Virus record (IMG/VR): IMGVR_UViG_3300025930_000007
Location: 124,001 to 188,000 of that record
Reading direction: 5' to 3' (one strand)
DNA: 64,000 nucleotides
Positions 4,032 through 63,304 of the stretch are shown in pieces; the first letter of the stretch is position 1, and each line of letters begins with the position of its first letter. The translations under genes were made by a program, and so were the position numbers. The notes beneath the pieces are model-generated. The model worked only from the letters and a program-made list of their open reading frames with translations, was not told the origin of the DNA and did not search any database.

Positions 4032-4457
4032 ATGAAGCTGAGCCAGGTGACGAACGCGGTCGAAGCCCAGGAAATGATCCAGGAGAAGGCCAAGGAACTG
4101 GCCGTCCAGGACAAGCGCACGGTCCTGAAGATGGAAGTTGGTCAGGTCGTCCGCCAGGGCGACATCTACATCCACCGCGTTCCGAATGATCACGAGCGCG
4201 GACTGGAGCTCAAGACCCGCCAGCTCGCGCTGGGCGAGTCCATGGGCAGCCGGCATATCGCTGAAGCGCCGGCCAAGGTCTGCGAAGGGACCGAAGCCCC
4301 GGGCTGGGCACAGACGGAACTGCTCGGGCCCTGCATCGTCGCCGAGCTTCCGTTCACGGTCTCGCACCCGGAGCACGCGCACATCGACCTTCCGGCCGGA
4401 GTCTATCAGGTGACGCACCAGATGGATGCGCGGACGCGGAAGCGCGTGATCGACTAA
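4032..4457 (+). CDS. conserved phage protein usually paired with DUF6745
   Basis: RQGDI...LALGESMGSRH...HPEHAHIDLPAGVY motifs. Confidence 0.7.
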   Translation: MKLSQVTNAVEAQEMIQEKAKELAVQDKRTVLKMEVGQVVRQGDIYIHRVPNDHERGLELKTRQLALGESMGSRHIAEAPAKVCEGTEAPGWAQTELLGPCIVAELPFTVSHPEHAHIDLPAGVYQVTHQMDARTRKRVID

Positions 4458-5522
4458 CTCCGGAGGAAGGCCTCCACGAATCCACCGAGATCGCCATCCA
4501 GCACCTTGCTGGTGGCCGACGTCTCATACTCCGTCCGATGGTCCTTGATAAGCTGATACGGCTCCAGGACATAGCTTCGGATCTGATGGCCGAAGGAGGC
4601 CTCGAGCTTCGGACGTCGCTCGATCTTGTTCTCCTCAGCCTGCCGCAGCTTGGAAGCCAGGATCTCCAGGGCGTTGACCTTGTTCTGGAGCTGGGAGCGA
4701 TGGTTCTGGCACTTTGCCGTGATCCCGGTGGGCAAGTGCCGGATCCGGACGGCACTCGCCACTTTGTTCACGTTCTGACCGCCTGGACCGCCTGAACAGA
4801 AGGTCTCAATCTCCAGGTCCTTCTCGGCCAGTTCCACGTCCACTTCTGAATAGACTGGCATGACGTCGACGGCCGCGAAGCTCGTCTGCTTCTTGCCGTT
4901 GGCATCAAATCTGGAGACGTGCTGGACCCGGTGGACCCCACGTTCACCCCGGAGTTTCCCATAGGCATAGGGACCGATCACCTCGATCTCCGAATGATGG
5001 ATGCCGGCCGTGGATCCTTCCAGCCGATCTGTGATGGATACCTGGAATCCTTCTCTTTCCAGGTACCGGAAATACATTCGCTCAAGCTGCTCAGCCCAAT
5101 CCATCGCGTCGACGCCGCCGGCGCCCGACTGGATCGTGATGATCGCGTTCCGAAGATCGTCGTTGCCGTTGAAGAGCGCCTGAGTCTCGATCGCTTGAAG
5201 CCTTGCAGCGAGTTTCGGAAGGATCATGGCGATCTCTCCCAGGACCGGGGCGTCCACGACCGGATCCGCCAGTTCAAGCAGCTCGGCCTGGTCTTGAAGA
5301 TCGGTCGTCAGGGTAGTTATGGGGTCGGAGATCTTACGGAGGTGTTTTTGTTCTTCGATCAGAGACCGAGCGGAGTCCGGACGGCTCCAGAAATCTGGAG
5401 CTCCCATCCGCCGCTCAATCTCCAGGATGCGTTCCGAGTGGACATGGATGCTAAAGCGACTCCTCGAGGGCTGCGAGCTTGGTGAGCATGGACCCGAGAT
5501 TCCGCGCGAGTTCGTCCTTCAT
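4454..5522 (-). CDS. prfB: peptide chain release factor 2-like protein made by a programmed +1 frameshift at CTT-TAG-C
   Basis: GGQ (SGGPGGQNVNK, 4775-4783), GAGGVDAMDWA, FGHQIRSYV; 23-codon first ORF from ATG 5522 (SD AAGGAGG) ends in CTT TAG; the +1 frame continues SIHVHSERILEIERRMGAPDFW. Confidence 0.93.
5450..5465 (-). promoter_or_regulatory. prfB-type +1 ribosomal frameshift site with a UAG sensor codon
   Basis: GAGGAG (internal SD)-TCG-CTT-TAG-C; same 3-nt spacing and position as canonical AGGGGG-TAT-CTT-TGA-C. Confidence 0.9.
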
Positions 5523-6688: not shown

Positions 6689-7015
6689 ATGCCGAAGAAG
6701 AAAGACATTCAAGAACTCGTCGTCGTCTTCGAGAGCATGTACAAGTATTACAAGGGCTGGGTGTTCTCCTACGAGCATCCTGGCGTCTTCGTATATTTCC
6801 AGATGGGCGGTGATCTCGGCGTGTACTTCACCCCCGATTTCGATAAGAACGGTGTCGTCCCGATCCAAGTCACCAACAACGATGGGGAGACACTTAAGGT
6901 TGAGGATGTTTCTTACGAGCACCCCGAACACAACGGCGTTCCATACGAGCAGATCGAGGCCTACAGCCTCTTCAAGATCGTTCGACCACACCTGGAAAGA
7001 TTAGGAGCATGGTGA
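6689..7015 (+). CDS. hypothetical protein
   Basis: 108-aa ORF tightly packed between neighbours. Confidence 0.65.
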   Translation: MPKKKDIQELVVVFESMYKYYKGWVFSYEHPGVFVYFQMGGDLGVYFTPDFDKNGVVPIQVTNNDGETLKVEDVSYEHPEHNGVPYEQIEAYSLFKIVRPHLERLGAW

Positions 7016-7554
7016 TGATCAACCTGAGACTGCAGCGCGCGGGACTGGGTCAAGCGGCTGCCGCGGCATCGAAAGTGGTGGAACTCACCGATGCTCAGTG
7101 GAGCCAGGTGACGGCTGCTCCGAAGGCGGTCGTCAAGTTCTACAGCCCGAACTGCCCGTATTCCCGGGCCTTCGCGCCGATCTATGAGGGTCTGGCCGCG
7201 CAATACCCGGACGTTCTGTTCGCCGCCATCAACGTCGACCAGAGCGTTCAGCAGGCCGGCGTGAACAAGATCCAGATGCTTCCGACCGTGATCTTCTTCG
7301 TGAACGGCGTGGCTAAGGGCAGGATCGACGGGGTACAGGAAGCATCAGACTTCCAGCAAGGGATGGCCACGGCATTCTCTGCCAGCACTCCGGCCGGCGC
7401 ACCGGCTCCGGCGGCCGCCCCTGCAGTGGGGACGCCTCGCGCGGGAACCTTGGTGGAGACTGCGCCTACTTCTCCCCTCGCTTATGTCGCTGGCGGCGCC
7501 GCGGCGGTAGCAGCGCTTGGTACTGCGGCCTATTTCCTGTTCCGTGGAAAGTAA
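7009..7554 (+). CDS. thioredoxin-fold protein (CxxS) with C-terminal membrane anchor
   Basis: VVKFYSPNCPYS, INVD, MLPTVIFFVNG; Ala/Pro linker; hydrophobic tail ending FRGK. Confidence 0.85.
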   Translation: MVMINLRLQRAGLGQAAAAASKVVELTDAQWSQVTAAPKAVVKFYSPNCPYSRAFAPIYEGLAAQYPDVLFAAINVDQSVQQAGVNKIQMLPTVIFFVNGVAKGRIDGVQEASDFQQGMATAFSASTPAGAPAPAAAPAVGTPRAGTLVETAPTSPLAYVAGGAAAVAALGTAAYFLFRGK

Positions 7555-7563
7555 GAGGGCATC

Positions 7564-8100
7564 ATGATCGATCTCAGAGGCGGAACATGGCTCGGCATGG
7601 TGCCGCTCGTCGACCGGCCATCTCTTGGTGCCGGGGCGCAGGATCTCAGCGACGCGGCCTTCAACCAGGTCCTATCGGCGCCGAAGGCGATCGTGGACTT
7701 CTGGAGTCCAGGCTGCCCGCACTGCATGCAGTTCAAGCCGATCTTCGAGGCTGTCGCCTCGCAATATCCGGACATCCTGTTCGCAGCAGTGAACGTGGAC
7801 AACTATCAGCAGAACGCAGCGATCTACCAGATCAGCGGTCTGCCCACGGTCGTCTTCTACCAGAACGGGAAGGAAGTAGACCGGATGGTGGGCGGGGCGG
7901 GGAGCGCCGCAGAGTTCCAGGCTGAGATCGCCAAGGCATTCTCGGGTGGCGGTTCATCGCCTCAAGGCCTGACCCCTGCGGGCGTCTCGATTCCCGCTTC
8001 CAGCGCTCCCAGCACTCTTTCGACGGTCGTGGGCGCTACCGCCCTTGTCGGCGTCCTTGGCGCCGTGTCCTACTTCGGCTACCAACTGCTGAAGAAGTGA
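7564..8100 (+). CDS. thioredoxin (CPHC) with C-terminal membrane anchor
   Basis: IVDFWSPGCPHC, VNVD, GLPTVVFYQNGKEVDRMVG; hydrophobic tail ending LLKK. Confidence 0.88.
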   Translation: MIDLRGGTWLGMVPLVDRPSLGAGAQDLSDAAFNQVLSAPKAIVDFWSPGCPHCMQFKPIFEAVASQYPDILFAAVNVDNYQQNAAIYQISGLPTVVFYQNGKEVDRMVGGAGSAAEFQAEIAKAFSGGGSSPQGLTPAGVSIPASSAPSTLSTVVGATALVGVLGAVSYFGYQLLKK

Positions 8101-12710: not shown

Positions 12711-13207
12711 ATGAAATCTTCTGGCACCTGACATCGGATCCCGGTTGGAAGCTGAAGCGGGATTATCACCCGATCTACGCTTATGGGGCCGGCACTCCCA
12801 CATCCAGGCCTGGTATTTTCGTCACGGACCAGCCGATCTACTGGTGCCCGTGGATGGGTAAAGGCCCGGTCTACGCTGCGCGGATTTCGGTTCCAAAGGA
12901 AATCCTGCCTCGGCCTTCGGAGAGCCATCCGGAATATCTGATTACGGATCTCGATCAGATCAAAGTCCTCGAATTTCTTCCTCTTGCCGAGATCATCAAA
13001 CGAGGAGAAGAGGAAAAAAGCCGTGGTATCCCTTGGTGGAACCAGCAATACGGCGGGTTCGGCAGCGTCGTGGATTGGTGGTTCTATTACGACCGAAACC
13101 AGGATCGGAAGTATCAACGCAAGGGGCTCGATGAGCTCAAGAAGAAATGGCTTAAAGAACATCCTGGCTTCAAGGATCCGGAAGAATACTACCGGAAACG
13201 CTCATGA
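12704..13207 (+). CDS. hypothetical protein, possible ADP-ribosyltransferase-like fold
   Basis: FWHLT ... GIFVTD ... EYLI spacing resembles the ART core. Confidence 0.4.
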   Translation: MVNEIFWHLTSDPGWKLKRDYHPIYAYGAGTPTSRPGIFVTDQPIYWCPWMGKGPVYAARISVPKEILPRPSESHPEYLITDLDQIKVLEFLPLAEIIKRGEEEKSRGIPWWNQQYGGFGSVVDWWFYYDRNQDRKYQRKGLDELKKKWLKEHPGFKDPEEYYRKRS

Positions 13208-13683
13208 GCGAAGAACGATTTGAAATCGACGGCGTCCATATTGTTTTCGACACCCTACGGGACGAACAGCCTTTGGGTGGTTTCGAGGCATGGGTTCCAG
13301 ACACGAAGTCGGGTCTGGATGGGCTTTATGGAAGTGCTTCTACTCTGGCCGGCCACATGATCGAAGCGGGGCGGTTTACTGTTGCCGCCAAGTGCATTCT
13401 GAAGGATGGTCGCACCGCTGCATGGATCGAATGGCTCGAGGTCGATCCCGCCAGACGGAGAGCAGGTTTGGCAAGCCGTATCCTCAAGGGAACACTTGCC
13501 GCGATGCGCCGTAAGAAAATCGGACAGATCTGGCTGGCTGCTTCGCCGGAGAGGGCTGAGGATCGCGAGGCGTTGCTCCAGCTCTACCGCCGGCATGGCT
13601 TCGATCTCGTACCAGAACCGTGCCGTGACCGTCGGTACGATGGGACGATGAAGGACATCATGGCGGCTTCGCTCGAAGAATAA
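13204..13683 (+). CDS. GNAT acetyltransferase
   Basis: LEVDPARRRAGLASRIL motif A; LYRRHGF. Confidence 0.85.
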   Translation: MSEERFEIDGVHIVFDTLRDEQPLGGFEAWVPDTKSGLDGLYGSASTLAGHMIEAGRFTVAAKCILKDGRTAAWIEWLEVDPARRRAGLASRILKGTLAAMRRKKIGQIWLAASPERAEDREALLQLYRRHGFDLVPEPCRDRRYDGTMKDIMAASLEE

Positions 13684-13785: not shown

Positions 13786-14466
13786 ATGAAGACGCTCTTC
13801 TCCTTCGGCTTCCAGTCGCACGATCCCTTCACGCTCCGGCATCCCAGCCTGAGCGGGTCTGCGACTCTGGGCCGGCCGATTCCTGTAATGGGACAGGAAA
13901 CCACGGAGTTTGAGCATCTCCGTGTTGCGGAAGCCGAGACGAACGCGGCGGTACGCGATCAACTGGCTGCGATCATCGCCCAGGGAACGCCCAAGGCGGC
14001 CCAGTGGAGAGCCTGGATTGCTGCGCAGTTCGCAAAGGATCCGACTCTGCTCTCGATCTTCAAGGAGCAGTACATCGTCGACAACATCCGCGGCTATCAG
14101 GACATCCTGAACACAGACCAGGCTTCCGTGGATATGGCGTCTCAGAAGATCGCGTCTCAGGATCCTCAGAACTGGTATTTCTCCGAAGACATGCAGATCC
14201 GCGTCGATGAATGGAACCGGGTCCTGGACATCCTCGTCGGTGCCATGAAGGAATACGGCGGCGTCAGGCCCGTCTCCACGGGGACTCCCGTGAAGATGGG
14301 TCCGATGTACAACCCGAAGACCGGCGCCGCGGTTCCGACCAGCATCGCTCCGGGAGCGACATTCAAGACGCCTCCTCCGACTTCGGGCATTCCCACGAAC
14401 ACGCTTCTGGTCGGCGGCGGGATCGCCGCGGCCGCGCTCGCGCTGATTCTGGCGTTGAAGGCCTAA
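13786..14466 (+). CDS. tail-anchored protein with LG/MGQ leader
   Basis: PSLSGSATLGRPIPVMGQ; C-terminal LLVGGGIAAAALALILALKA. Confidence 0.7.
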   Translation: MKTLFSFGFQSHDPFTLRHPSLSGSATLGRPIPVMGQETTEFEHLRVAEAETNAAVRDQLAAIIAQGTPKAAQWRAWIAAQFAKDPTLLSIFKEQYIVDNIRGYQDILNTDQASVDMASQKIASQDPQNWYFSEDMQIRVDEWNRVLDILVGAMKEYGGVRPVSTGTPVKMGPMYNPKTGAAVPTSIAPGATFKTPPPTSGIPTNTLLVGGGIAAAALALILALKA

Positions 14467-14493
14467 TCTTTATATTCAAGACGGAGATCTGAT

Positions 14494-15330
14494 ATGGTGA
14501 TGGGACCTTGCGGACCGTGTGCTCCAGGAGCAACGCCATTCGGCGGCCCGGCCAGCGGCCTTTGGCCATCCGGCTCGGGCATAGGACCTGCGGCTGGGCC
14601 TGTGGGCCCGATCATCTCGCCAACACCTACTCCTACTCCTATTCCGATTCCGACTCCTATCGGTCCTGCCCCTGTAGAGCTCGGCCTGGCGGCCTTCTTC
14701 AAGATCCTCGCAGAAACGGCGATCACGAACGTTCCGACGTCCAACATCATCGGCAACGTCGGCCTCAGCCCGGCCGCTGCCTCGAACATTACCGGGTTCG
14801 CGCTCGTGCTGGACGGCTCCGGCCAGTTCGCGACATCCTCTCAGGTCGCGTCTCCCGGCAAGGTCTACGCGGCCGACTACGCGCCTCCGACGCCGGCCAT
14901 GCTCACAGCCGCGGTCCTGGCGATGCAGACGGCATATACCGATGCTTCCCTCAGGCCCGCAGACTTCACGAACGTGAACGGCGGCAGTCTCGGAGGTCTT
15001 ACGCTTTCGCCGGGCACCTACAAGTTCACGTCGAACGTCAATATCGCATCGGATCTCACTCTCGCCGGTGGTCCGAATGATACCTGGATCTTCCAGGTCG
15101 ATGGGACCTTCGACATGACGGGTGGTGCGGACATCATCCTGACCGGCGGCGCTCAGAAGCAGAATGTCGTCTGGCAGGTCGCCGGCGCGACGACCATCGG
15201 ACCGGGCTCGATCTTCCAGGGGACGCTGCTCGATCAGACGAGCATCGCGCTGCAGACGGGCGCCGAGGCTCACGGCAAGCTGTATGCCCAGAGCGCGGTG
15301 ACGCTGGACAACAACTTCGTCGACGGCTAA
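14494..15330 (+). CDS. ice-binding-like protein (DUF3494/IBP-1) on a Pro/Thr stalk
   Basis: VELG..F.ILA.T.IT.VP.S.I.GNVGLSPAAA, GKVYAADYAPPTP, AYTDA, LGGLTLSPGTYKF, WIFQV, NVVWQVAG, AQSAVTLD. Confidence 0.92.
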   Translation: MVMGPCGPCAPGATPFGGPASGLWPSGSGIGPAAGPVGPIISPTPTPTPIPIPTPIGPAPVELGLAAFFKILAETAITNVPTSNIIGNVGLSPAAASNITGFALVLDGSGQFATSSQVASPGKVYAADYAPPTPAMLTAAVLAMQTAYTDASLRPADFTNVNGGSLGGLTLSPGTYKFTSNVNIASDLTLAGGPNDTWIFQVDGTFDMTGGADIILTGGAQKQNVVWQVAGATTIGPGSIFQGTLLDQTSIALQTGAEAHGKLYAQSAVTLDNNFVDG

Positions 15331-15332
15331 CG

Positions 15333-15671
15333 ATGGCAAAAAGAAGCCTTGAATTCGGGATGCAGCCGCCCAAGGGCACCAAGGTGGCCTGGGGCGCGCG
15401 GGCTATCTTCAAGCCCATCTCCAAGAATCCCATGATCGACATCCTGTGGGATCGGCAGGATGCCTTCGGTGACAAGGAAGAGCGTGAAGATCTGGTGGAA
15501 TGGGTCAGGAAATCCGGAATGCCCTGGCTGAATCAGGAAATGGAAGACAAAGCCAGCTACTCTATCAGCAGATCCCATGAAGTCTTCCGGCACGAGGATG
15601 GGGATTATGTCCTCGAGGCCAGTCCGAAGGGAAGTGCTGGGTATCTCTATATCGGAGCTTGGAAGGAGTAG
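15333..15671 (+). CDS. hypothetical phage protein
   Basis: 112-aa ORF in operon. Confidence 0.65.
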   Translation: MAKRSLEFGMQPPKGTKVAWGARAIFKPISKNPMIDILWDRQDAFGDKEEREDLVEWVRKSGMPWLNQEMEDKASYSISRSHEVFRHEDGDYVLEASPKGSAGYLYIGAWKE

Positions 15672-15674
15672 ATC

Positions 15675-15935
15675 ATGTTTGGAATCTTCTCCGCGCCTCA
15701 CATATCGATTGGCTGGTCCGGCGGCGGCGCCGGCGGCGGCCCTGATACCGGCGCCGGGATTCCTCCTGGCGGCTTCCCCGGCATCTACCCAGGTGCAGGC
15801 GTCTCCAACTCCGGCTGGGCCGGCCTCACGGAGTTCCAGCAAGAGCAGCTCAAGAAAGACTGCGTCAAGAAGGGCACGTGCGTCCTCGGGCCTCCCGCAA
15901 GCTTCCTGGGATCCAAGCCTAAGGGCTGGCGCTAA
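15675..15935 (+). CDS. Gly-rich small protein
   Basis: AAGGAG SD; 86 aa. Confidence 0.55.
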   Translation: MFGIFSAPHISIGWSGGGAGGGPDTGAGIPPGGFPGIYPGAGVSNSGWAGLTEFQQEQLKKDCVKKGTCVLGPPASFLGSKPKGWR

Positions 15936-15947
15936 GGCCGCCGAGAT

Positions 15948-16331
15948 GTGTTCACGATCGCCAAGCTCATAGACACAGATCCCGACCGCGCAACCTTCCT
16001 GACGACGAATCTGTTCGTATTCGACGAGGAGTCCAAGCGCCTTACGGTCATCATGGTTTTCGTTGATCGTAGAGAGATCCTTTGGGCGAAATTGCTTGGC
16101 TGTGGACCAGGGCCTAAAACCTTCCGGGAAGTATTCCAAGAGCTTCAAAGGGGAATGGAAGAAGCTCCGGATAATACACGGTTGATCTACAAAGAACATA
16201 TCCGCGACATCAACGATGTCGAAGACTTCGCAATCGAGCATTTCAAAGAGTACGTCGAAGGGATTTCCATCATGGGGACCCATGAGGACATCGCGGAGAT
16301 CCTGCACCGCTGCTTCAAGATCCCTGTCTGA
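15948..16331 (+). CDS. hypothetical protein, possibly related to 23297 and 23683
   Basis: GTG-TTC start, similar length and N-terminal pattern. Confidence 0.6.
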   Translation: MFTIAKLIDTDPDRATFLTTNLFVFDEESKRLTVIMVFVDRREILWAKLLGCGPGPKTFREVFQELQRGMEEAPDNTRLIYKEHIRDINDVEDFAIEHFKEYVEGISIMGTHEDIAEILHRCFKIPV

Positions 16332-24057: not shown

Positions 24058-24563
24058 AGATCGCCGGCTGGCATGGCGGCCCAAGAAATCTGGTCGGGCC
24101 TCTTAGAGGTACCTGTTCCTCCGAAGGATGCGGCGTCTATCTTGCCGACACAAAAGCCTTCGCCGCCCACTTCGGATATCCCCATCGCGTGATAGCGTCG
24201 ATCAGGAATCCACTGGTCGTTGACGGAGAGAACATGCCGGCGCTCGAGGGGAACCTGCATCTTGGATTCTTCAGGGATAGTGCGCCGGATACCACCTGGA
24301 TGCGAGCGAACTACTATGCCTCTGAGAAGGCCGAGCTCCTGGATGTGGATCCGGACCGCGATCGCCAGCTTTATTTCGAACGTCTCTTTAGCCGGTTCGG
24401 GCCCGCACTCAATGCTTATCTACGCAAACGCGGCTATGATTCCATCTTGTTCAAGCTGCAGGTCGATCGCCTGCCGGAGCGCTTCAGCCAGGATCCCAAA
24501 CTCGCCGGGAAAGAAGTCCAGTGGTGGGTTGTGTTCGATTCGGCAAAAGTGCAGCTTGACTAG
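24054..24563 (+). CDS. ADP-ribosyltransferase-like protein (ART-PolyVal-like)
   Basis: WHGG, GVYLA, AAHFG, IRNPLVVD, GYDSI, VVFDS pattern. Confidence 0.6.
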   Translation: MKIAGWHGGPRNLVGPLRGTCSSEGCGVYLADTKAFAAHFGYPHRVIASIRNPLVVDGENMPALEGNLHLGFFRDSAPDTTWMRANYYASEKAELLDVDPDRDRQLYFERLFSRFGPALNAYLRKRGYDSILFKLQVDRLPERFSQDPKLAGKEVQWWVVFDSAKVQLD

Positions 24564-25276
24564 CGCGACGCGATGATGCTCACGGTCGTCGGGACGTGGT
24601 AGTCCGCCGGCATGTCTGGGCCCGGTTTCAGAACCTCAATGGACTTGAAACCTCCGTCCTGCAGGAGCAAGATCAGCGCGGTGGCGGTGGGAACAGTCCT
24701 CAGATCGGAAGATAGATTCGACCGGATCGTGGTAGGCTCACCCTTCGTCCGGGCCCGGAGATGGAAACAGGGTTTGTCATCGACGGCCACTTCCCCATCG
24801 ATGACGAGGATCTCCTTGGTGATCTTCATCGCCTTGCGAAGGACGTGAATCGGATCTGTCAGATGGTAGTGCACTCCCAGCATGAGCGTGACATCGGGAT
24901 CCGCGCCAGTCCACCCATCCTCGTCCTCGAGGTGCGCTTTCATAAAGACGCAGTTATTGATCCCCAAGGTGTAGGCGGCCGCCTCCGCTTCCTGGATGAA
25001 GGCCTCTGAGGAATCCAGGCCCAGGACATGCGCTGCTCCGGATCTCGCAGCTTCCATGCTCCAATAACCTTGGCAGCAGCCGAGATCAAGAACCTTCTTT
25101 CCGGCGAGAGATCCTCCGAAATGGTTGAGGAGCGGCTGGAAGAAGTGAGCCTTGCGCTTCTCGACACGATCCGCCCAGCCAGGCCGCGTGGGGACCGTTT
25201 CTCCCCACGGGAATTCGAAGCGGTAGTGCCAGTAGAGAGCCTTCTCGAGGATCTTGCGGGCTTCGTCCGGGCTCAT
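24560..25276 (-). CDS. class I SAM-dependent methyltransferase (CmoB/DUF1698-like)
   Basis: WHYRFEF, GKKVLDLGCCQGYWS, VLGLD, GVHYHLTDP. Confidence 0.85.
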   Translation of the reverse strand: MSPDEARKILEKALYWHYRFEFPWGETVPTRPGWADRVEKRKAHFFQPLLNHFGGSLAGKKVLDLGCCQGYWSMEAARSGAAHVLGLDSSEAFIQEAEAAAYTLGINNCVFMKAHLEDEDGWTGADPDVTLMLGVHYHLTDPIHVLRKAMKITKEILVIDGEVAVDDKPCFHLRARTKGEPTTIRSNLSSDLRTVPTATALILLLQDGGFKSIEVLKPGPDMPADYHVPTTVSIIASR

Positions 25277-25974
25277 ATCCTTGTCGGAGTGACCTTCACC
25301 GTAAACTTGGGTTTCTCCGGCTCGGGCTTGGGAGGGCTTTCTGGTACCAGTTTGGCGGTTGAATCAGCGTACCAGATGCTCGACCGGTGATTGACGGCAT
25401 AGGATTCCGCGGGCGGATTCGTAATCAGCATGGGCTTCTTGGGGAAGGCCTTATATTCCTCGTGGGTATAAGGGATGAAGGTCTTCCGGTCGAAGACGCG
25501 CACGCCGGGTTCTCCCATGACATGCTTCGTGAAAAAGGGAGGTCCCATCGCGTTCCAGGGTTCCGGCTTGAAATTCTTTCGGCAATCCCAGACGATCTTC
25601 TGCAGGAGTTTATGGCCTTTGGTGACTCCGATGACCGCATTGCTGTAGACCTTCAGGTCCTCGCGCTGCCAGCAGACGAAGAAATCGACGCCGTTCACCA
25701 ACATGTCGATGTTCTTAAGGCATTCCATGTCGGTATCGAGATAGACGCCGCCTTCCCGGTAGAGGATCTCGTAGCGGGCGATGTCCGAGCGCTGGGCCAA
25801 GCTCGTGCATTTCGGGAAGATATCCCGGTTGTTCAGCTTGCTGCATTCCTTTTCCGTCCAGAGCTTCATCGTCCAGGTCGGATGCAGCTTCATCCAGGAC
25901 TCGCCCCATTTCGAGAAGTGGAAGGGCATGGGCTTACCGCCCAGCCAGATTCGATGGAAGATTTTCGGGATCAT
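25273..25974 (-). CDS. glycosyltransferase, GT32/Och1-like (DXD)
   Basis: MIPKIFHRIWLG, SDIARYEILYREGGVYLDTDMECLK, GPPFFT. Confidence 0.9.
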   Translation of the reverse strand: MIPKIFHRIWLGGKPMPFHFSKWGESWMKLHPTWTMKLWTEKECSKLNNRDIFPKCTSLAQRSDIARYEILYREGGVYLDTDMECLKNIDMLVNGVDFFVCWQREDLKVYSNAVIGVTKGHKLLQKIVWDCRKNFKPEPWNAMGPPFFTKHVMGEPGVRVFDRKTFIPYTHEEYKAFPKKPMLITNPPAESYAVNHRSSIWYADSTAKLVPESPPKPEPEKPKFTVKVTPTRI

Positions 25975-26802: not shown

Positions 26803-27723
26803 CTATGAGCAGCAGAACTCCGTCGTCGGAGGGAGCACGCCGGACGTCACGAAGACGCTGGTGACGCTGGCGGAATCCGGGAAGACGTTCCCCGAACCCA
26901 TGAAGATAGCTGCCACATCCCCCGGCATGGTGCCGAAGTTGATGCCGCCGATGAGCAGGAACGTCAAGGGAACGACCACACCATCCAGGTAAAGCGTCGG
27001 AACTCCCCCGGCGCTGACCGTCAGATGGACCTCGTGCGTTCCATTGTTGGGAGTCCAGGAGCCGCTGTAGACGGAGGCCCCGACGCTCGGCCCGATCGAC
27101 AGGAACAGCGTTCCGTTGTCGACCATGCGAAGGTCGAATCCATAGGTGGCGCCGGTGCCCACCAGGAAGAACTGATAGAACGAGAAGCCTCCGCCGGTCG
27201 GTGCAGGATATTCCGTGAAGGTCGCCTGATACGTGATGTTGTTGACGCTGGGGAAACTGATCGGCTTGGTGGCGGCCGGGACGTCGTTGTTCGCCGCGGA
27301 ATCCATGTGCATGACGCCCGGAGTAAAAGAGACGGAGCCTCCCTTGCCGCCGAAAGCATTGCTGAAGGTCCACCCGCAGACGGGACCTGGAGTCACCGCG
27401 TTGATGGGCCCTCCGGTGCAAGGGAAACAGTCGGCCAGGATCGAGGCCGTTACGCAGGAAGGGGTCGGAGGAGGCGTTGGAGTGGGAGTCGGCGCCGGCG
27501 GAGTGGGGTTATTGGAAGCCCACAGGCCGCTCGCGGGGCCCGACGTCGGAGACGAGAGGGGAGTTCCCATCCTGGCGATCGGTGCGACGAAGGCGACGAC
27601 CTGTTTGGGGATCGGGCCCTTGAAGCATTGAAGGGAAGGCATGCCGCGCGGAGTGGTCGGCTTTGTGACGATGCAGTTGGGCCGACGAGGCGGCGGCGGT
27701 GGCGGGTTCCCCGGCTTGTTCAT
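26803..27723 (-). CDS. GPASGLW/Pro-Thr stalk protein with lectin/LamG-like beta-rich head, paralog of 62441-63304
   Basis: GPASGLW, PTPTPTPPPTPSC, ADCF, WTP..GTH.V, LYLDGVVVPLT, FCC terminus; start MNKPG after GGAGG. Confidence 0.7.
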   Translation of the reverse strand: MNKPGNPPPPPPRRPNCIVTKPTTPRGMPSLQCFKGPIPKQVVAFVAPIARMGTPLSSPTSGPASGLWASNNPTPPAPTPTPTPPPTPSCVTASILADCFPCTGGPINAVTPGPVCGWTFSNAFGGKGGSVSFTPGVMHMDSAANNDVPAATKPISFPSVNNITYQATFTEYPAPTGGGFSFYQFFLVGTGATYGFDLRMVDNGTLFLSIGPSVGASVYSGSWTPNNGTHEVHLTVSAGGVPTLYLDGVVVPLTFLLIGGINFGTMPGDVAAIFMGSGNVFPDSASVTSVFVTSGVLPPTTEFCCS

Positions 27724-36110: not shown

Positions 36111-36431
36111 CTACTTGACCAGCTTGAATTTATTGAGTGGATCGAGCGGCTTCATCATCCTCATGAGGCTGGCCATCGGATCCTTGCACGGCACCCATTC
36201 CGCGGGAGCTTCCGAGAGAAACTTGAAGTCGGCATCCACAACTCGGGCTGACTCGATGAAGGCCTTGCGAACCTTCTTCCAGCTTCTGGGCCCCTTCTCG
36301 ATCACCTGGGCGAGGTAGCACGGGCCCGGCGCACTCCAGGAGCTCTCGAGGACATCCAGGATCCGCCAGATCGCACGGCCATAGGTGCCGTCGAAGTAGA
36401 TCTTGTCGCCCTTCTTGAATCTAGGCTTCAT
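36111..36431 (-). CDS. hypothetical protein
   Basis: MKPRFKKGD start overlaps the recombinase stop (ATGA). Confidence 0.55.
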   Translation of the reverse strand: MKPRFKKGDKIYFDGTYGRAIWRILDVLESSWSAPGPCYLAQVIEKGPRSWKKVRKAFIESARVVDADFKFLSEAPAEWVPCKDPMASLMRMMKPLDPLNKFKLVK

Positions 36432-37525
36432 GTTCCCATCACGATCTTGGAGAAGTCGGCCAGGCCCTCCGATCCGATGCGCTCCATGCTTCCGAGATAG
36501 ATATCGGTGGTCTTGAGATCGGCATGGCCGAGGCGTTCCTTGATCTCCTTCACGTCCTTCCCAAGTTTCTTCATCACCCTGGCTCCCAGGTGGCGGAGGC
36601 CGTGCATGTGGATGTTCACGATGTCCGGATCTAGGCCTGCCTGGGCGCCGTGGCTCTTGATGAGGGCGTCGAGGGAGGAAGCGGAAAGCGGCTGCTCTCC
36701 TACCTTCATCTTGATGTTCCGGGCCCGGTTGAGGTACTTCCCGGCGTCGGTGGTGGCGATCCACGCGGGCGAGCTCCCCTTCAGGATGCGTCCGGCCGAA
36801 TTCCAGTAGTCCTGGATGGCCTTGATGATCTCGTCGGTAAGGTCGATCAGGATGGGGTGGCCGCCCTTCTGGATGAAGCGGATGTAGGTCTTGCCCGAGT
36901 CCTCCTTGAAGTCGGAGAAGCGGATGCGGGCGATCTCCTGCCGCCGGCGGGTGGTCCAGAGGGTGGTGGTCATGATCGCGTAATCGCGCTTCCCGATGAC
37001 CGTCCGGCGATCGCAGGTCGCGAGGAGTTTGTGGTATTCCTCGACCGTGAACTCGCGTAGGTCATTGGATTTCTCGTAAGCCTGGATCTTGGGGAGGATC
37101 TCCTTGATGGACTTCCACGGATTCGACTGGATGATGGCGGTTCCCATGGTGTCCATGGGGCGCGCGAGGAAGTCGAAGAAGGAGGAGGCGGCCGCACAGT
37201 AGTTCCGGATCGTGCGGTCGGCCAGGCCCTTCTTCCGGAGATGGTCGACGTAGCTGGTGAGGTGGGTGCGTGTCACGGCAACGGGGCTCTGGAGGCCGGT
37301 GGCGGCCAAGAACCCGAAGAATTCGCGGAGCGCGACCTCGTAGGTGGTCCAGCTCGAGGGCTTCTTCATGGCCTTGAAGTCGTAGAGGGCCATGGCCATC
37401 TGCTGGGGCCAATGGGCGAGATTCCCTTTCACGGTGCTCTGCAGGTGGACCAGCTTGTGAGGGACCGGCGAAAGGGGTTGCGGGATAGGGGTCAGCGGGA
37501 AATTCTGTTTCGGCGTCTCGTCCAC
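36428..37525 (-). CDS. tyrosine recombinase/integrase (XerC/D-like)
   Basis: Core-binding domain; RDYAI..TTRRRQEI, QKGG, HGLRH, LGHADLKTTDIY catalytic motifs. Confidence 0.92.
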   Translation of the reverse strand: MDETPKQNFPLTPIPQPLSPVPHKLVHLQSTVKGNLAHWPQQMAMALYDFKAMKKPSSWTTYEVALREFFGFLAATGLQSPVAVTRTHLTSYVDHLRKKGLADRTIRNYCAAASSFFDFLARPMDTMGTAIIQSNPWKSIKEILPKIQAYEKSNDLREFTVEEYHKLLATCDRRTVIGKRDYAIMTTTLWTTRRRQEIARIRFSDFKEDSGKTYIRFIQKGGHPILIDLTDEIIKAIQDYWNSAGRILKGSSPAWIATTDAGKYLNRARNIKMKVGEQPLSASSLDALIKSHGAQAGLDPDIVNIHMHGLRHLGARVMKKLGKDVKEIKERLGHADLKTTDIYLGSMERIGSEGLADFSKIVMGT

Positions 37526-61362: not shown

Positions 61363-61992
61363 TCATGAATCCACGATCTTCTTTCCTTCGATCGGACCGT
61401 ATTGGGCCAGCACCTTGTCGATCCAAGTCTGCGTCTTGGCCTTAGCCATGACGAGCTTGTGGCCGCTGCCGCTCTTCCCCACCACGCCCTCGAACGTCAC
61501 CTTGGGCGAGAGATCGTCCTTCCCCTCCCGGATCCGGTCGACGAAGCCGCGGGTCCAGTTGAAGCAGCCGAGGAAAGGTGCGATCCGAAGATGCTTGAAG
61601 TTGTCGAGGAACTCTTTGGGACCCAGGATGCCCTTCTTGTTGGGGCAGGCATCGAACAGAGTCAAGGTCTTTGGATCCTGGGGATCATGCTTTCCGGCAA
61701 AGGAATTCTTTCCCCAGAACTCCATGAACACGATCAGATGATCCCAGCGGTTCTTCTTGATGACCTCGTTCAGCTTCTCCTGCCAGAACTCGAGGAACAG
61801 CGGAATAGCCAAGCCGAAATCAGGATCGGTGTGATCGAACAGGCGATTGCGAGTGCCGAACTTGTGCCAGCCCTGCTTCCGGCTGTATTCGAAGCGCAGA
61901 TTGGAACCGTCGAGCTTGTCGAAGACGTAGGCAGCATCCATTTCGCGGAACTTCTGCCCGTTGCTGGATTGAATTGAAGGGTAAGGCTTCAC
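61363..61992 (-). CDS. ATP-dependent RNA ligase-like nucleotidyltransferase
   Basis: YPSI, KLDGSN (motif I), GTRN, MEFWG, LFD, EGVV, KAK. Confidence 0.8.
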   Translation of the reverse strand: MKPYPSIQSSNGQKFREMDAAYVFDKLDGSNLRFEYSRKQGWHKFGTRNRLFDHTDPDFGLAIPLFLEFWQEKLNEVIKKNRWDHLIVFMEFWGKNSFAGKHDPQDPKTLTLFDACPNKKGILGPKEFLDNFKHLRIAPFLGCFNWTRGFVDRIREGKDDLSPKVTFEGVVGKSGSGHKLVMAKAKTQTWIDKVLAQYGPIEGKKIVDS

Positions 61993-62440: not shown

Positions 62441-63304
62441 TCAGGGACAGCAGAAGGCCGTGTTGTCGGGGATGTTCCCGTTCGCGAAGAAGATGCTATC
62501 GAAGGAGCCCTTCCCGTCGGCCTCATCGTTGTCCGTAATGATGATATCCATAACGGAAGGAGCTCCGGTGACAGGTCCAGGGACCAAAGGCGTGAGCGGG
62601 ACATTCACGCCGTCCAACGTCAGAGTAAGGTTGCCCAGGCCATCACCCTTTAAGATGACCGAGTGCGTCGCCCCTTGCGCCGGAGTCCATGTGAACGTAT
62701 CGAGAGTCGCCAGGTCTCCGGCAAAGCCAGTTCCATCACCCGTAAACTGGACGAGAGCCACCGCGTTACCGGCGCCGTTGAAAGCTCCGATGATATAGAC
62801 CTTGTTGAAGGTCGGGGTAAAGTTGACCTCGGTGAACTCAAACCTCAACGTCCACGTCCCCGCCGGAGTCAGGACGGATTTTCTGATCTCGCCCTGAGGG
62901 AGTCCGCTGAAGAGTGGACCGCTCCCGAGGTAGACCTTCTGGTCCGCGAAGACAACGGTGCCTGGTGGAGTTTCCACGCTCCAGCCGACGTTTCCCGTGG
63001 TAAAGCAATCGGCGAAGAGGTCGGCATTCACGCAGACAGGAGTAGGAGGCGGTGTCGGCGTAGGCGCAGGCGAAGGAGTAGGCGCAGGAGTCCCATTGTT
63101 TGCCCAAAGGCCAGAGGCCGGACCTCCGGTGGGCGAGAGACTCGGACGAGCCGTGGGCGTGGGTGCTGCCACGTTGAAGCAAACCATCTGAGGAGGCCGA
63201 TTAGGTTGCACGGGCGGCTTCACCGTGCATATGGCCTTCGGTGGTCGAACAACAGAGGGCGGCGCGGTCGGACGGGCAGGGCCCGGACGAGGCTTCCCCA
63301 TCAT
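62441..63304 (-). CDS. GPASGLW/Pro-Thr stalk protein with lectin/LamG-like head, paralog of 26803-27723
   Basis: GGPASGLW, PTPPPTPVC, ADCF, WTP..GATHSV, LTLDGVNVPLT, FCC terminus. Confidence 0.7.
   Translation of the reverse strand: MMGKPRPGPARPTAPPSVVRPPKAICTVKPPVQPNRPPQMVCFNVAAPTPTARPSLSPTGGPASGLWANNGTPAPTPSPAPTPTPPPTPVCVNADLFADCFTTGNVGWSVETPPGTVVFADQKVYLGSGPLFSGLPQGEIRKSVLTPAGTWTLRFEFTEVNFTPTFNKVYIIGAFNGAGNAVALVQFTGDGTGFAGDLATLDTFTWTPAQGATHSVILKGDGLGNLTLTLDGVNVPLTPLVPGPVTGAPSVMDIIITDNDEADGKGSFDSIFFANGNIPDNTAFCCP

What the first reader, a model, noticed from the sequence alone, without database searches (positions are those of the whole stretch)
14670..15330. Complete ice-binding (DUF3494) domain in a phage-like element
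Seen: a full-length IBP-1 beta-solenoid pattern. Known: the family is mostly secreted by cold-adapted bacteria, fungi and algae and spreads horizontally. Here the signal peptide is replaced by the GPASGLW stalk. Inference: freeze protection or adhesion to ice or surfaces, hinting at a cold or freeze-thaw habitat.
Basis: partly seen in the sequence, partly recalled or inferred. Interest (0 to 1): 0.6.

Follow-up and report, generated by a model that had tools for sequence, protein, structure and literature searches.

The report
Ice-binding-fold head on jumbo phage protein
A 266-kb soil phage encodes a complete ice-binding-type beta-solenoid domain that has no secretion signal and instead carries a short phage-specific N-terminal tag and a flexible stalk, which the phage also uses on lectin-like proteins; it looks like an interchangeable binding head, and whether it binds ice has not been tested.

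Summary
Window 14494-15330 (+) encodes a 278-aa protein. Residues 71-276 match Pfam PF11999 (Ice_binding/DUF3494) end to end (E 4.7e-68). The AlphaFold model superposes on solved antifreeze proteins (TM 0.97, rmsd 0.8 Å).

The "phage-like element" is a 266,490-bp IMG/VR jumbo phage. It is found in rhizosphere and soil metagenomes, not in an overtly cold habitat.

Cellular homologues (47-58% identical, from many phyla) carry signal or lipoprotein peptides. The phage protein instead has a conserved N-terminal tag (CxPC...FGGPASGLW) followed by a Gly/Pro/Thr stalk. At least 57 sequence clusters share this architecture and form one clade.

The same tag and stalk also sit on ConA/LamG-like paralogues, three in this genome and others in relatives. 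This indicates module swapping.

In other viral contigs the domain is the C-terminal end of signal-less proteins. One of these lies between the major head and tail-fibre genes.

The face equivalent to the ice-binding site keeps small residues and is preferentially conserved in the phage clade.

Best reading: a tethered binding head, probably displayed on the virion. Ice as the ligand is plausible but unproven. I rate it a new variant of a known kind, of moderate interest.

The parts
14494..15330 (+). Gene for the 278-aa phage ice-binding-like protein (P0001), stop codon included
   Evidence: ORF list and translation; PF11999 E 4.7e-68; identical gene in a second IMG/VR record (L002)
14483..14486 (+). 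GGAG ribosome-binding site 7 nt upstream of the ATG at 14494
   Evidence: Upstream sequence printed. An in-frame stop 9 codons upstream limits the N-terminus.
14503..14574 (+). N-terminal tag, residues 4-27: G-P-C-G-P-C ... P-F-G-G-P-A-S-G-L-W-P-S-G. It is specific to the phage clade and replaces the signal peptide.
   Evidence: Conserved in 57 clusters. Absent from all cellular homologues. Present on non-IBP proteins P0122 and P0123. pLDDT below 50.
14575..14661 (+). Gly/Pro/Thr-rich flexible stalk, residues 28-56, including a PTPTPTPIPIPTP stretch. Length and sequence vary among relatives.
   Evidence: Alignment A1; low pLDDT
14662..15327 (+). IBP-1 / DUF3494 beta-solenoid domain, residues 57-278 (Pfam envelope 71-276 = window 14704-15321). 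The b-face segments equivalent to the TisAFP ice-binding site are residues 74-80, 93-100, 179-185, 203-209, 230-236, 248-254 and 266-272.
   Evidence: ice-binding-site segments from PMC7966756; conservation analysis
13786..14466 (+). Upstream 226-aa protein with a C-terminal hydrophobic tail anchor, 27 nt from the IBP gene. It is co-linear with the IBP gene in close relatives only.
   Evidence: sequence; no Pfam or PHROG hit; a 225-aa gene sits in the same position in the P0004 contig
26803..27723 (-). Paralogue carrying the same GPASGLW tag and PT stalk, but with a ConA/LamG-like C-terminal domain ending in FCCS. It is the first gene of a run that continues with an unknown 257-aa protein, a glycosyltransferase and a methyltransferase.
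62441..63304 (-). Second in-window paralogue: GGPASGLW tag, PT stalk and a ConA/LamG-like domain ending in FCCP
   Evidence: ESM Atlas structural matches to Sialidase-like CBM, Laminin_G and 3-keto-disaccharide hydrolase folds, TM 0.66-0.74.
24560..25974 (-). SAM methyltransferase (24560-25276) and DXD glycosyltransferase (25273-25974), downstream of the paralogue on the same strand. They are candidate modifiers of the PT stalks (inference only).
   Evidence: Pfam hits PF13847 and PF04488; the same gene pair is present in the P0004 contig

Best explanation
The gene encodes a three-part phage protein. Part one is a roughly 25-residue N-terminal tag (CxPC ... FGGPASGLW). Part two is a flexible Gly/Pro/Thr stalk. 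Part three is a complete IBP-1 (DUF3494) beta-solenoid head. SHOWN: the head is a true family member with an intact, flat, small-residue b-face. The gene entered this jumbo-phage lineage once and has been kept with its tag through divergence down to about 55% identity. The same tag and stalk carry a different, lectin-like (ConA/LamG) head in paralogues, so the heads are interchangeable cargo on a common tether. There is no Sec, Tat or lipoprotein signal, so the protein is made and stays in the infected cell's cytoplasm until assembly or lysis. INFERRED: the tag docks the protein, possibly through its cysteines, onto a phage structure. The most likely site is the virion surface, as a decoration or side fibre, with the stalk holding the head out so that its b-face can bind an extended, regularly spaced surface. 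The ligand is either ice or a polysaccharide or similar surface on the host or soil matrix. Ice would give adsorption to ice fronts, local inhibition of recrystallisation and freeze-thaw protection of virions in seasonally frozen soil. My estimates: about 0.5-0.6 that the isolated domain binds ice in vitro, about 0.45 that it is virion-displayed, and about 0.35 that ice is the biologically relevant ligand.
For: Family and fold.
b-face: the TisAFP ice-binding-site segments map onto small and polar residues (T20 to T75, A214 to T270), with no bulky residue on the sheet. Positions constrained specifically in the phage clade are enriched in those segments (9 of 19 against 17 of 79, Fisher p = 0.026). 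Strands b4-b6 are nearly invariant.
Single origin: 62 phage-clade sequences form one clade, SH-aLRT 92. Cellular homologues align only from residue 50-60 onward and have signal or lipobox peptides.
Module swapping: four tag-bearing ORFs in this genome. P0122 and P0123 carry the identical tag with the other head. A distant clade member has both types 2.2 kb apart. The other head has a ConA/LamG/CBM-like fold.
Independent phages: a 641-650-aa signal-less protein with a C-terminal PF11999 domain lies between the major head protein (phrog_752, 6.7e-42) and a tail-fibre gene (phrog_772) in L003/L004; homologous proteins occur in L110-L113, whose flanking genes were not scanned. Further signal-less N-terminal-extension architectures occur in L114 and P0097.
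Glycosyltransferase genes adjoin tag-bearing genes.
Against: No PHROG or Pfam virion-protein homology for this protein or its immediate neighbours. In this phage clade the gene sits among accessory genes (release factor, thioredoxins, GNAT, methyltransferases, glycosyltransferases), not in a recognisable structural module. No capsid, terminase or sheath gene could be located to define such a module. The tag is only about 25 residues and is predicted to be disordered; no partner is known. The habitat labels are soil and rhizosphere, not ice. The b-face enrichment is modest, and the Mann-Whitney test on outward-facing residues gave p = 0.08. The RNA evidence is two short contigs in one library that may contain DNA.
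Confidence: 0.45

Rival explanations
1. Auxiliary gene for cryoprotection. The protein is not part of the virion. It accumulates in the infected cell and is released at lysis (or acts inside the cell), limiting ice damage to host or progeny during freeze-thaw. This is how PF11999 hits on Arctic viral contigs have been interpreted.
For: Literature precedent for 'ice-binding-like' viral auxiliary metabolic genes (PMC11515562). The gene lies in an accessory-gene neighbourhood. The phage also encodes a fatty-acid desaturase. The domain is 46-57% identical to experimentally active ice-binding proteins.
Against: There is no export signal, whereas every cellular homologue inspected has one. A free soluble protein released at lysis would be diluted. 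This reading does not explain why the same conserved tag and stalk are kept on lectin-like paralogues. The habitat is not labelled cold.
Confidence: 0.22
2. Non-ice adhesin. The beta-solenoid head binds a host-surface or matrix polysaccharide, as a receptor-binding or biofilm-binding module, and has nothing to do with ice. DUF3494 here serves as a generic substrate-binding scaffold.
For: [quoted passage not shown] Sister modules on the same tether are carbohydrate-binding-module-like. Homologues are common in non-cold MAGs. The phage-clade b-face is unusually invariant, as expected for one specific ligand. The samples are soil and rhizosphere.
Against: The domain falls among experimentally verified ice binders by sequence and structure. 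No glycan-binding DUF3494 of the PF11999 type was found among the solved structures. Temperate soils freeze seasonally, so ice cannot be excluded.
Confidence: 0.3
3. The N-terminal Cys/Trp tag is an unconventional sorting or modification signal. It might be a substrate site for phage glycosyltransferases or thioredoxins, or for host envelope targeting. It would send these proteins to the infected cell's surface, for example for superinfection exclusion or surface remodelling, rather than to the virion.
For: CxPC resembles a redox-active motif, and two thioredoxin genes lie 6-7 kb upstream. Glycosyltransferase and methyltransferase genes follow a tag-bearing paralogue. A tail-anchored membrane protein gene lies immediately upstream.
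Against: No known export pathway recognises such a tag, and it has no hydrophobic segment. The upstream membrane protein is not conserved next to the gene in distant clade members. This reading is entirely inferential.
Confidence: 0.1

Closest known systems
Microbial DUF3494 / IBP-1 ice-binding proteins: Candidatus Cryosericum odellii IBPs (9li0, 9lhn, 9lhs), Typhula ishikariensis TisAFP6/7/8 (3vn3, 7dc5, 5b5h), and the capping-head-swapped FfIBP mutant mFfIBP (4nu3)
   Same: Full-length PF11999 domain. In the Foldseek alignments the model is 44-50% identical to the Cryosericum IBPs and 46-47% to the TisAFPs, with TM up to 0.97 and rmsd 0.8-1.0 Å. It has the same discontinuous beta-solenoid with a flanking long helix, and small residues at the positions of T20 and A214.
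   Different: It has no signal peptide. It carries a phage-specific CxPC...GGPASGLW tag and a Gly/Pro/Thr stalk. It is encoded by a jumbo phage from soil and rhizosphere. Position 43 is Asn or Ala rather than the Phe of the hyperactive isoforms. Its activity is untested.
'Ice-binding-like' PF11999 auxiliary metabolic genes reported on Arctic surface-microlayer viral contigs (PMC11515562)
   Same: A PF11999 domain on metagenomic viral contigs, with cryoprotection proposed as the function.
   Different: Those contigs are marine and polar, and the genes were interpreted as host-benefit auxiliary genes. No architecture, tether or paralogue analysis was reported. The present family is from soil, forms a large monophyletic phage clade, and shows module swapping.
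DUF3494 proteins of the soil giant virus Hyperionvirus (BFVD A0A3G5A745, A0A3G5AEI1, A0A3G5ACG7)
   Same: These are the only viral proteins in BFVD with this fold (E 1e-12 to 1e-7). As far as I recall, Hyperionvirus also comes from a soil metagenome; the BFVD output gives no source.
   Different: They are from a eukaryote-infecting giant virus, are only 19-28% identical with TM 0.54-0.63, and lack the tag.
Modular phage receptor-binding and decoration proteins with a conserved N-terminal virion anchor and exchangeable C-terminal heads (general principle of tailspikes, fibres and Hoc-like decorations)
   Same: The conserved N-terminus, flexible linker and swapped C-terminal binding domains among paralogues and relatives follow this logic. 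In L003/L004 the domain ends a protein encoded inside the head-tail structural module.
   Different: There is no sequence or profile similarity to any known anchor domain (PHROGs gave no hit). The tag is far shorter than typical anchors. Virion association has not been shown.

Membership tests
DUF3494 / PF11999 ice-binding-like (IBP-1 fold) | Full-length match to the family profile above the curated threshold | tested here: met
   229.4 bits against a cut-off of 28.7, profile positions 1-207 of 208; 230.2 bits
DUF3494 / PF11999 ice-binding-like (IBP-1 fold) | Discontinuous triangular beta-solenoid braced by one long alpha-helix | tested here: met
   AF2 pLDDT above 90 with helix 133-152 and strands as listed; TM 0.92-0.97 to 5b5h, 3vn3, 9lhn and 3uyu
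DUF3494 / PF11999 ice-binding-like (IBP-1 fold) | Flat b-face lined by small or polar residues, with no bulky side chains at the mutationally sensitive positions (TisAFP7 T20 and A214) | tested here: met
   T75 and T270 occupy those positions. Outward b-face residues are E/A/T/V, T/N/N/A, D/T/D/T, A/A/T/G, Q/S/A/Q and Q/A/T/D. The mapping was made by alignment, not from coordinates.
DUF3494 / PF11999 ice-binding-like (IBP-1 fold) | Measured ice binding (thermal hysteresis, recrystallisation inhibition, ice shaping) | not testable with these tools
   Needs recombinant protein. The literature states that no ice-binding-site sequence motif predicts activity (PMC7966756).
Secreted or surface-anchored cellular ice-binding proteins | N-terminal Sec or lipoprotein signal peptide | tested here: not met
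   The N-terminus is Gly/Pro-rich with no hydrophobic core. Cellular homologues show signal or lipobox peptides.
Phage virion fibre or decoration protein | Conserved N-terminal module shared by proteins with different C-terminal binding heads | tested here: met
   Four tag-bearing ORFs with two head types in this genome; P0122 and P0123; L022-L024
Phage virion fibre or decoration protein | Homology to known virion proteins, or location in a structural gene module | tested here: not met
   No PHROG hit. Neighbours are accessory genes. This feature is met only for the unrelated L003/L004 IBP-domain protein.
Phage virion fibre or decoration protein | Physical presence in purified particles | not testable with these tools
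   No isolate or virion proteome is available.
Viral auxiliary metabolic gene for host cryoprotection | The product reaches the compartment where ice forms (extracellular or periplasmic) while the host is alive | tested here: not met
   No recognisable export signal

The most novel reading that the evidence does not exclude
The CxPC...GGPASGLW peptide is a previously undescribed docking tag. A widespread lineage of soil jumbo phages would use it to hang interchangeable binding heads (lectin-like and ice-binding-fold) on stalks, possibly glycosylated by the phage's own glycosyltransferases, from the virion surface. The ice-binding head would give the particles true ice affinity and freeze-thaw protection. 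That would make this the first structural, rather than auxiliary, use of an antifreeze-type domain by a virus.
Probability: 0.2. Interest if true: 0.8.

Novelty: new variant of a known kind. Interest (0 to 1): 0.55.

Why it matters
If the head binds ice, this would be a virus that carries its own antifreeze or ice-adhesion device. That bears on how phages persist and find hosts in seasonally frozen soils, and on phage cryostability. Independently of the ligand, the tag-stalk-head system is a compact natural display scaffold shared by at least two head types across a large, uncultured jumbo-phage clade. The tag's partner, once found, would define a new virion or envelope attachment mechanism. 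The finding also cautions against automatically annotating PF11999 on viral contigs as a host-benefit auxiliary metabolic gene.

Tried and rejected
- PHROGs scan of the protein and nine neighbours: nothing informative.
- tblastn of the whole protein, of the domain alone and of the L003 domain against 50,697 GenBank phage records, down to E <= 1: no match. The reported S-SKS1 homology could therefore not be reproduced here.
- Pfam terminase (PF03237) and sheath (PF04984) searches of the genome: no match. PHROG scans of the 20 largest ORFs found collagen-like tail fibres, glycosyltransferases, ribonucleotide reductase, helicase, ligase and methyltransferase, but no capsid, portal or terminase. 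The structural module could not be located.
- AF2 model of a ConA-like paralogue: pLDDT 53, too poor for a fold search. The ESM Atlas structural neighbours were used as a lead instead.
- Word search restricted to residues 1-40: only 44 candidates, of which 2 were non-IBP tag bearers.
- IMG/VR scan with the paralogue alignment: only the near-identical genome was found.
The IBP tree gives no supported donor, so the host remains unknown.
- Literature search for 'DUF3494' with 'phage': one irrelevant paper. 'Cryosericum' with 'ice-binding protein': none.
- A Tat signal was considered for the RR-containing extensions in some relatives and rejected, because no hydrophobic region follows.
- A collagen-like triple helix was considered for the tag and rejected, because the G-x-y register breaks after two triplets.
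- Complex prediction was not used, because no candidate partner is justified.
- The large representative protein search was not used, because family assignment is unambiguous.

Full report
**1. The observation**

The window is bases 124001-188000 of a single-contig IMG/VR virus record of 266,490 bp, rated 92% complete by CheckV.
- The ORF at window 14494-15330 (+) encodes 278 residues. It has a GGAG site 7 nt upstream and an in-frame stop 9 codons upstream.
- Residues 71-276 match Pfam PF11999 (Ice_binding, formerly DUF3494) over profile positions 1-207 of 208, with E 4.7e-68 and 229 bits against a cut-off of 28.7.
- An AlphaFold2 model built on 25 homologues has pLDDT above 90 for about residues 55-278. 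It shows the long helix (133-152) and the strand pattern of the IBP-1 fold. Residues 1-38 are disordered.
- The first 30 Foldseek PDB hits are all solved DUF3494 ice-binding proteins. TisAFP8 (5b5h) gives a target-normalised TM of 0.97 and rmsd 0.8 Å.
- By sequence, the nearest solved proteins are the Candidatus Cryosericum odellii IBPs (E 7.5e-62; 48-50% identity for these three entries in the Foldseek alignments), the head-swapped FfIBP mutant 4nu3, and TisAFP6.

**2. What the element is**

The record is a jumbo phage, not an island in a bacterial chromosome.
- It has several collagen-like tail-fibre genes, a 1,211-aa multi-glycosyltransferase, ribonucleotide reductase, helicase, ligase and DNA methyltransferase.
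- It has 32 tRNA genes, a class-I release factor, two thioredoxins and a tyrosine integrase.
- I could not find the capsid, portal, terminase or sheath genes by profile search.

The stretch around the gene occurs nearly identically in 19 DNA runs from 15 studies. All are labelled rhizosphere or soil metagenomes. From memory only, the IMG sample series of the twin record (3300005544) is a temperate agricultural rhizosphere study. I could not verify this here.

**3. Architecture and relatives**

The word-indexed protein search returned more than 3,000 PF11999 proteins.
- The best-scoring set, roughly the first 60, are 270-310 aa and align over the whole query, including the N-terminus.
- 57 of these 90%-identity clusters carry C-x-P-C followed by (F/L)-G-G-P-(A/G/T)-(S/A)-x-x-(W/F/Y), then a variable Gly/Pro/Thr stretch, then the domain.
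- Lower-scoring hits have classic signal or lipoprotein peptides. So do most of the ORFs I read out of the 79 genome loci from very diverse bacteria and archaea, which are 47-58% identical. These cellular sequences align only from about residue 50-60 onward.
- In a tree of 200 domains, the 62 phage-type sequences (57 tagged plus 5 N-terminally truncated) form one clade with SH-aLRT 92. The sister group is unsupported. The next neighbours are other signal-less proteins.

So the domain was captured once by this phage lineage. It lost the secretion signal, gained the tag, and has been maintained while diverging to about 55% identity.

**4. The tag is a shared module**

- A six-frame motif scan of the genome finds GGPASGLW/GPASGLW in four ORFs. 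These are the IBP gene, window 26803-27723 (-), window 62441-63304 (-), and genome 81124-81852 (+).
- The other three share a different C-terminal domain ending in F-C-C-(P/S).
- For one of them, the ESM Atlas's own model has structural neighbours in the ConA-like superfamily (Sialidase-like CBM, Laminin_G, 3-keto-disaccharide hydrolase) with TM 0.66-0.74. My own AF2 model was too poor to use.
- Two database proteins (P0122, P0123) combine an N-terminal tag almost letter-for-letter identical to that of IBP relatives with this lectin-like head.
- A distant clade member (IBP 62% identical) has both kinds of gene 2.2 kb apart.

This is module swapping: one tether carrying at least two kinds of binding head.

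**5. Other phages**

- In IMG/VR contigs L003/L004, a 641-650-aa signal-less protein ends in a full PF11999 domain. It contains a chitobiase/hexosaminidase C-terminal-type domain and Ig-like stretches. Homologous proteins occur in L110-L113.
- In L003 its gene lies between the major head protein (phrog_752, E 6.7e-42) and a tail-fibre gene (phrog_772).
- L114 (406 aa) and P0097 (470 aa, on a 93-kb phage-like contig) are further signal-less architectures with N-terminal extensions.
- No GenBank phage record matches even at E <= 1, and no PHROG family matches.
- In BFVD, the only viral proteins with this fold are three DUF3494 proteins of Hyperionvirus, a giant virus.
- The literature has only annotation-level reports of 'ice-binding-like' auxiliary metabolic genes on polar marine viral contigs (PMC11515562).

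**6. The putative ice-binding face**

- PMC7966756 lists the TisAFP ice-binding-site segments and the sensitive positions T20 and A214. It also states that the family has no conserved ice-binding-site motif.
- Through the phmmer alignment, these segments map to residues 74-80, 93-100, 179-185, 203-209, 230-236, 248-254 and 266-272.
- T20 corresponds to T75 and A214 to T270. Position 43, which is Phe in the hyperactive isoforms and Ser in TisAFP6, is Asn here and mostly Ala in the clade.
- The outward-facing sheet residues are small or polar.
- Within the phage clade, strands b4-b6 (A230, A232, T234, G236; Q248, N/S250, A252, Q254; Q266, A268, T270, D272) are nearly invariant. The same columns are among the most variable in cellular homologues.
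- Positions that vary in cells but are fixed in the phage clade are enriched in the ice-binding-site segments: 9 of 19 against 17 of 79, Fisher p = 0.026. A rank test on the outward residues alone gives p = 0.08.

The face is therefore not degenerate and looks functionally constrained. This does not identify the ligand.

**7. Context**

- Close relatives keep the local gene order: release factor, methyltransferase, two thioredoxins, several unknown genes, GNAT, a 225-aa tail-anchored protein, then the IBP gene.
- More distant relatives place the gene after a glycosyltransferase, or among ParB, HNH and thioredoxin genes.
- The in-window paralogue at 26803-27723 (-) is followed on the same strand by an unknown gene, a DXD glycosyltransferase and a SAM methyltransferase.
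- One rhizosphere RNA library contains two short identical contigs, at 14501-14662 and 15667-15849. This does not prove transcription.

**8. Interpretation**

The firm conclusion is that this is a true IBP-1 domain on a phage-specific tether that is shared with lectin-like heads.

The most economical mechanism is a tethered binding head assembled in the cytoplasm onto a phage structure, most likely the virion surface. Its b-face would bind an extended surface. I give this 0.45.

The ligand may be ice. The domain is 44-50% identical (Foldseek alignments) to proven ice binders, the face is intact, and temperate soils freeze. It may equally be a polysaccharide or another surface. The sister heads are CBM-like, the family is widespread in non-cold settings, and the literature recognises substrate-binding DUF3494 proteins.

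The auxiliary-gene reading is weakened by the missing export signal and by the shared tag. The cold-habitat inference is not supported by the metadata.

**9. Novelty**

The domain family is well known, and viral PF11999 hits have been noted before. What is new is:
- the large monophyletic soil jumbo-phage clade;
- the replacement of the signal peptide by a conserved CxPC...GGPASGLW tag plus stalk;
- the sharing of that tether with a second head type;
- the recurrent position of the domain at the C-terminus of signal-less phage proteins, once inside a head-tail module.

I rate it a new variant of a known kind, with interest 0.55.

Noticed in passing
window 4454-5407 (-): The phage encodes a class-I peptide chain release factor (PCRF E 1.5e-42 and RF-1 E 1.8e-34). 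It is conserved in a related contig. ORFs read normally under table 11, and none of the 32 tRNAs found in the loci scanned is a suppressor, so there is no sign of recoding.
   Followed up: partly
window 7009-7554 (+) and 7564-8100 (+): Two tandem thioredoxin-fold genes lie 6-7 kb upstream of the IBP gene; the first was confirmed by Pfam, the second is inferred from the syntenic contig. The IBP tag contains C-G-P-C, the same tetrapeptide as the thioredoxin active site. A redox link is speculative.
   Followed up: partly
window 26803-27723 (-), window 62441-63304 (-), and genome 81124-81852 (+) = L012:11124-11852: Three paralogues carry the GGPASGLW tag and a PT stalk, with a ConA/LamG-like head ending in F-C-C-P/S. 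The two longer ones have an extra Pro/Arg-rich N-terminal extension with two spaced cysteines.
   Followed up: yes
window 24560-25974 (-): A SAM methyltransferase and a DXD (Gly_transf_sug) glycosyltransferase lie downstream of a tag-bearing paralogue. The genome has several more glycosyltransferases, including a 1,211-aa multi-glycosyltransferase protein at genome 26470-30105. Glycosylation of the stalk or the virion is possible.
   Followed up: partly
window 36428-37525 (-): A tyrosine recombinase/integrase (Phage_integrase E 6.8e-19) in a 266-kb phage. It suggests a temperate or plasmid-like lifestyle, or a role in dimer resolution.
   Followed up: no
genome 57.4-71.6 kb (L011:1399-15556), outside the window: A block of 32 tRNA genes covering most amino acids.
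   Followed up: no
genome 84602-85459 (L012:14602-15459) and genome 188265-188798 (L016:6265-6798): A phage-encoded fatty-acid desaturase (E 9e-18) and an APS kinase (E 3.9e-41). A desaturase could fit a low-temperature membrane-fluidity theme, but this was not examined.
   Followed up: no
window 13786-14466 (+): A 226-aa protein with a C-terminal hydrophobic tail anchor lies immediately upstream of the IBP gene. It has no family hit and is conserved there only in close relatives.
   Followed up: partly
window 13204-13683 (+) and window 61363-61992 (-): A GNAT acetyltransferase and an RNA-ligase-family gene.
   Followed up: no
genome 1102-20918 (L007, L008): At least four large paralogous collagen-like tail-fibre genes (PHROG tail-fibre families, E values down to 1e-66).
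   Followed up: partly
L003:4519-10591, and the homologous proteins in L110-L113: An independent phage lineage has a 641-650-aa protein (N-terminal unknown domain, CHB_HEX_C, Ig-like region, C-terminal PF11999). In L003 it is encoded between the major head protein and a tail-fibre gene.
   Followed up: partly
window 14501-14662 and 15667-15849: Two short contigs identical to the window occur in a rhizosphere metatranscriptome library (run X20). This may indicate transcription or DNA carry-over.
   Followed up: partly
window 15327-16307 (-): A 326-aa antisense ORF scores well on codon usage. Related contigs instead call small plus-strand genes here (79, 107 and 123 aa), so it is probably spurious.
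   Followed up: partly
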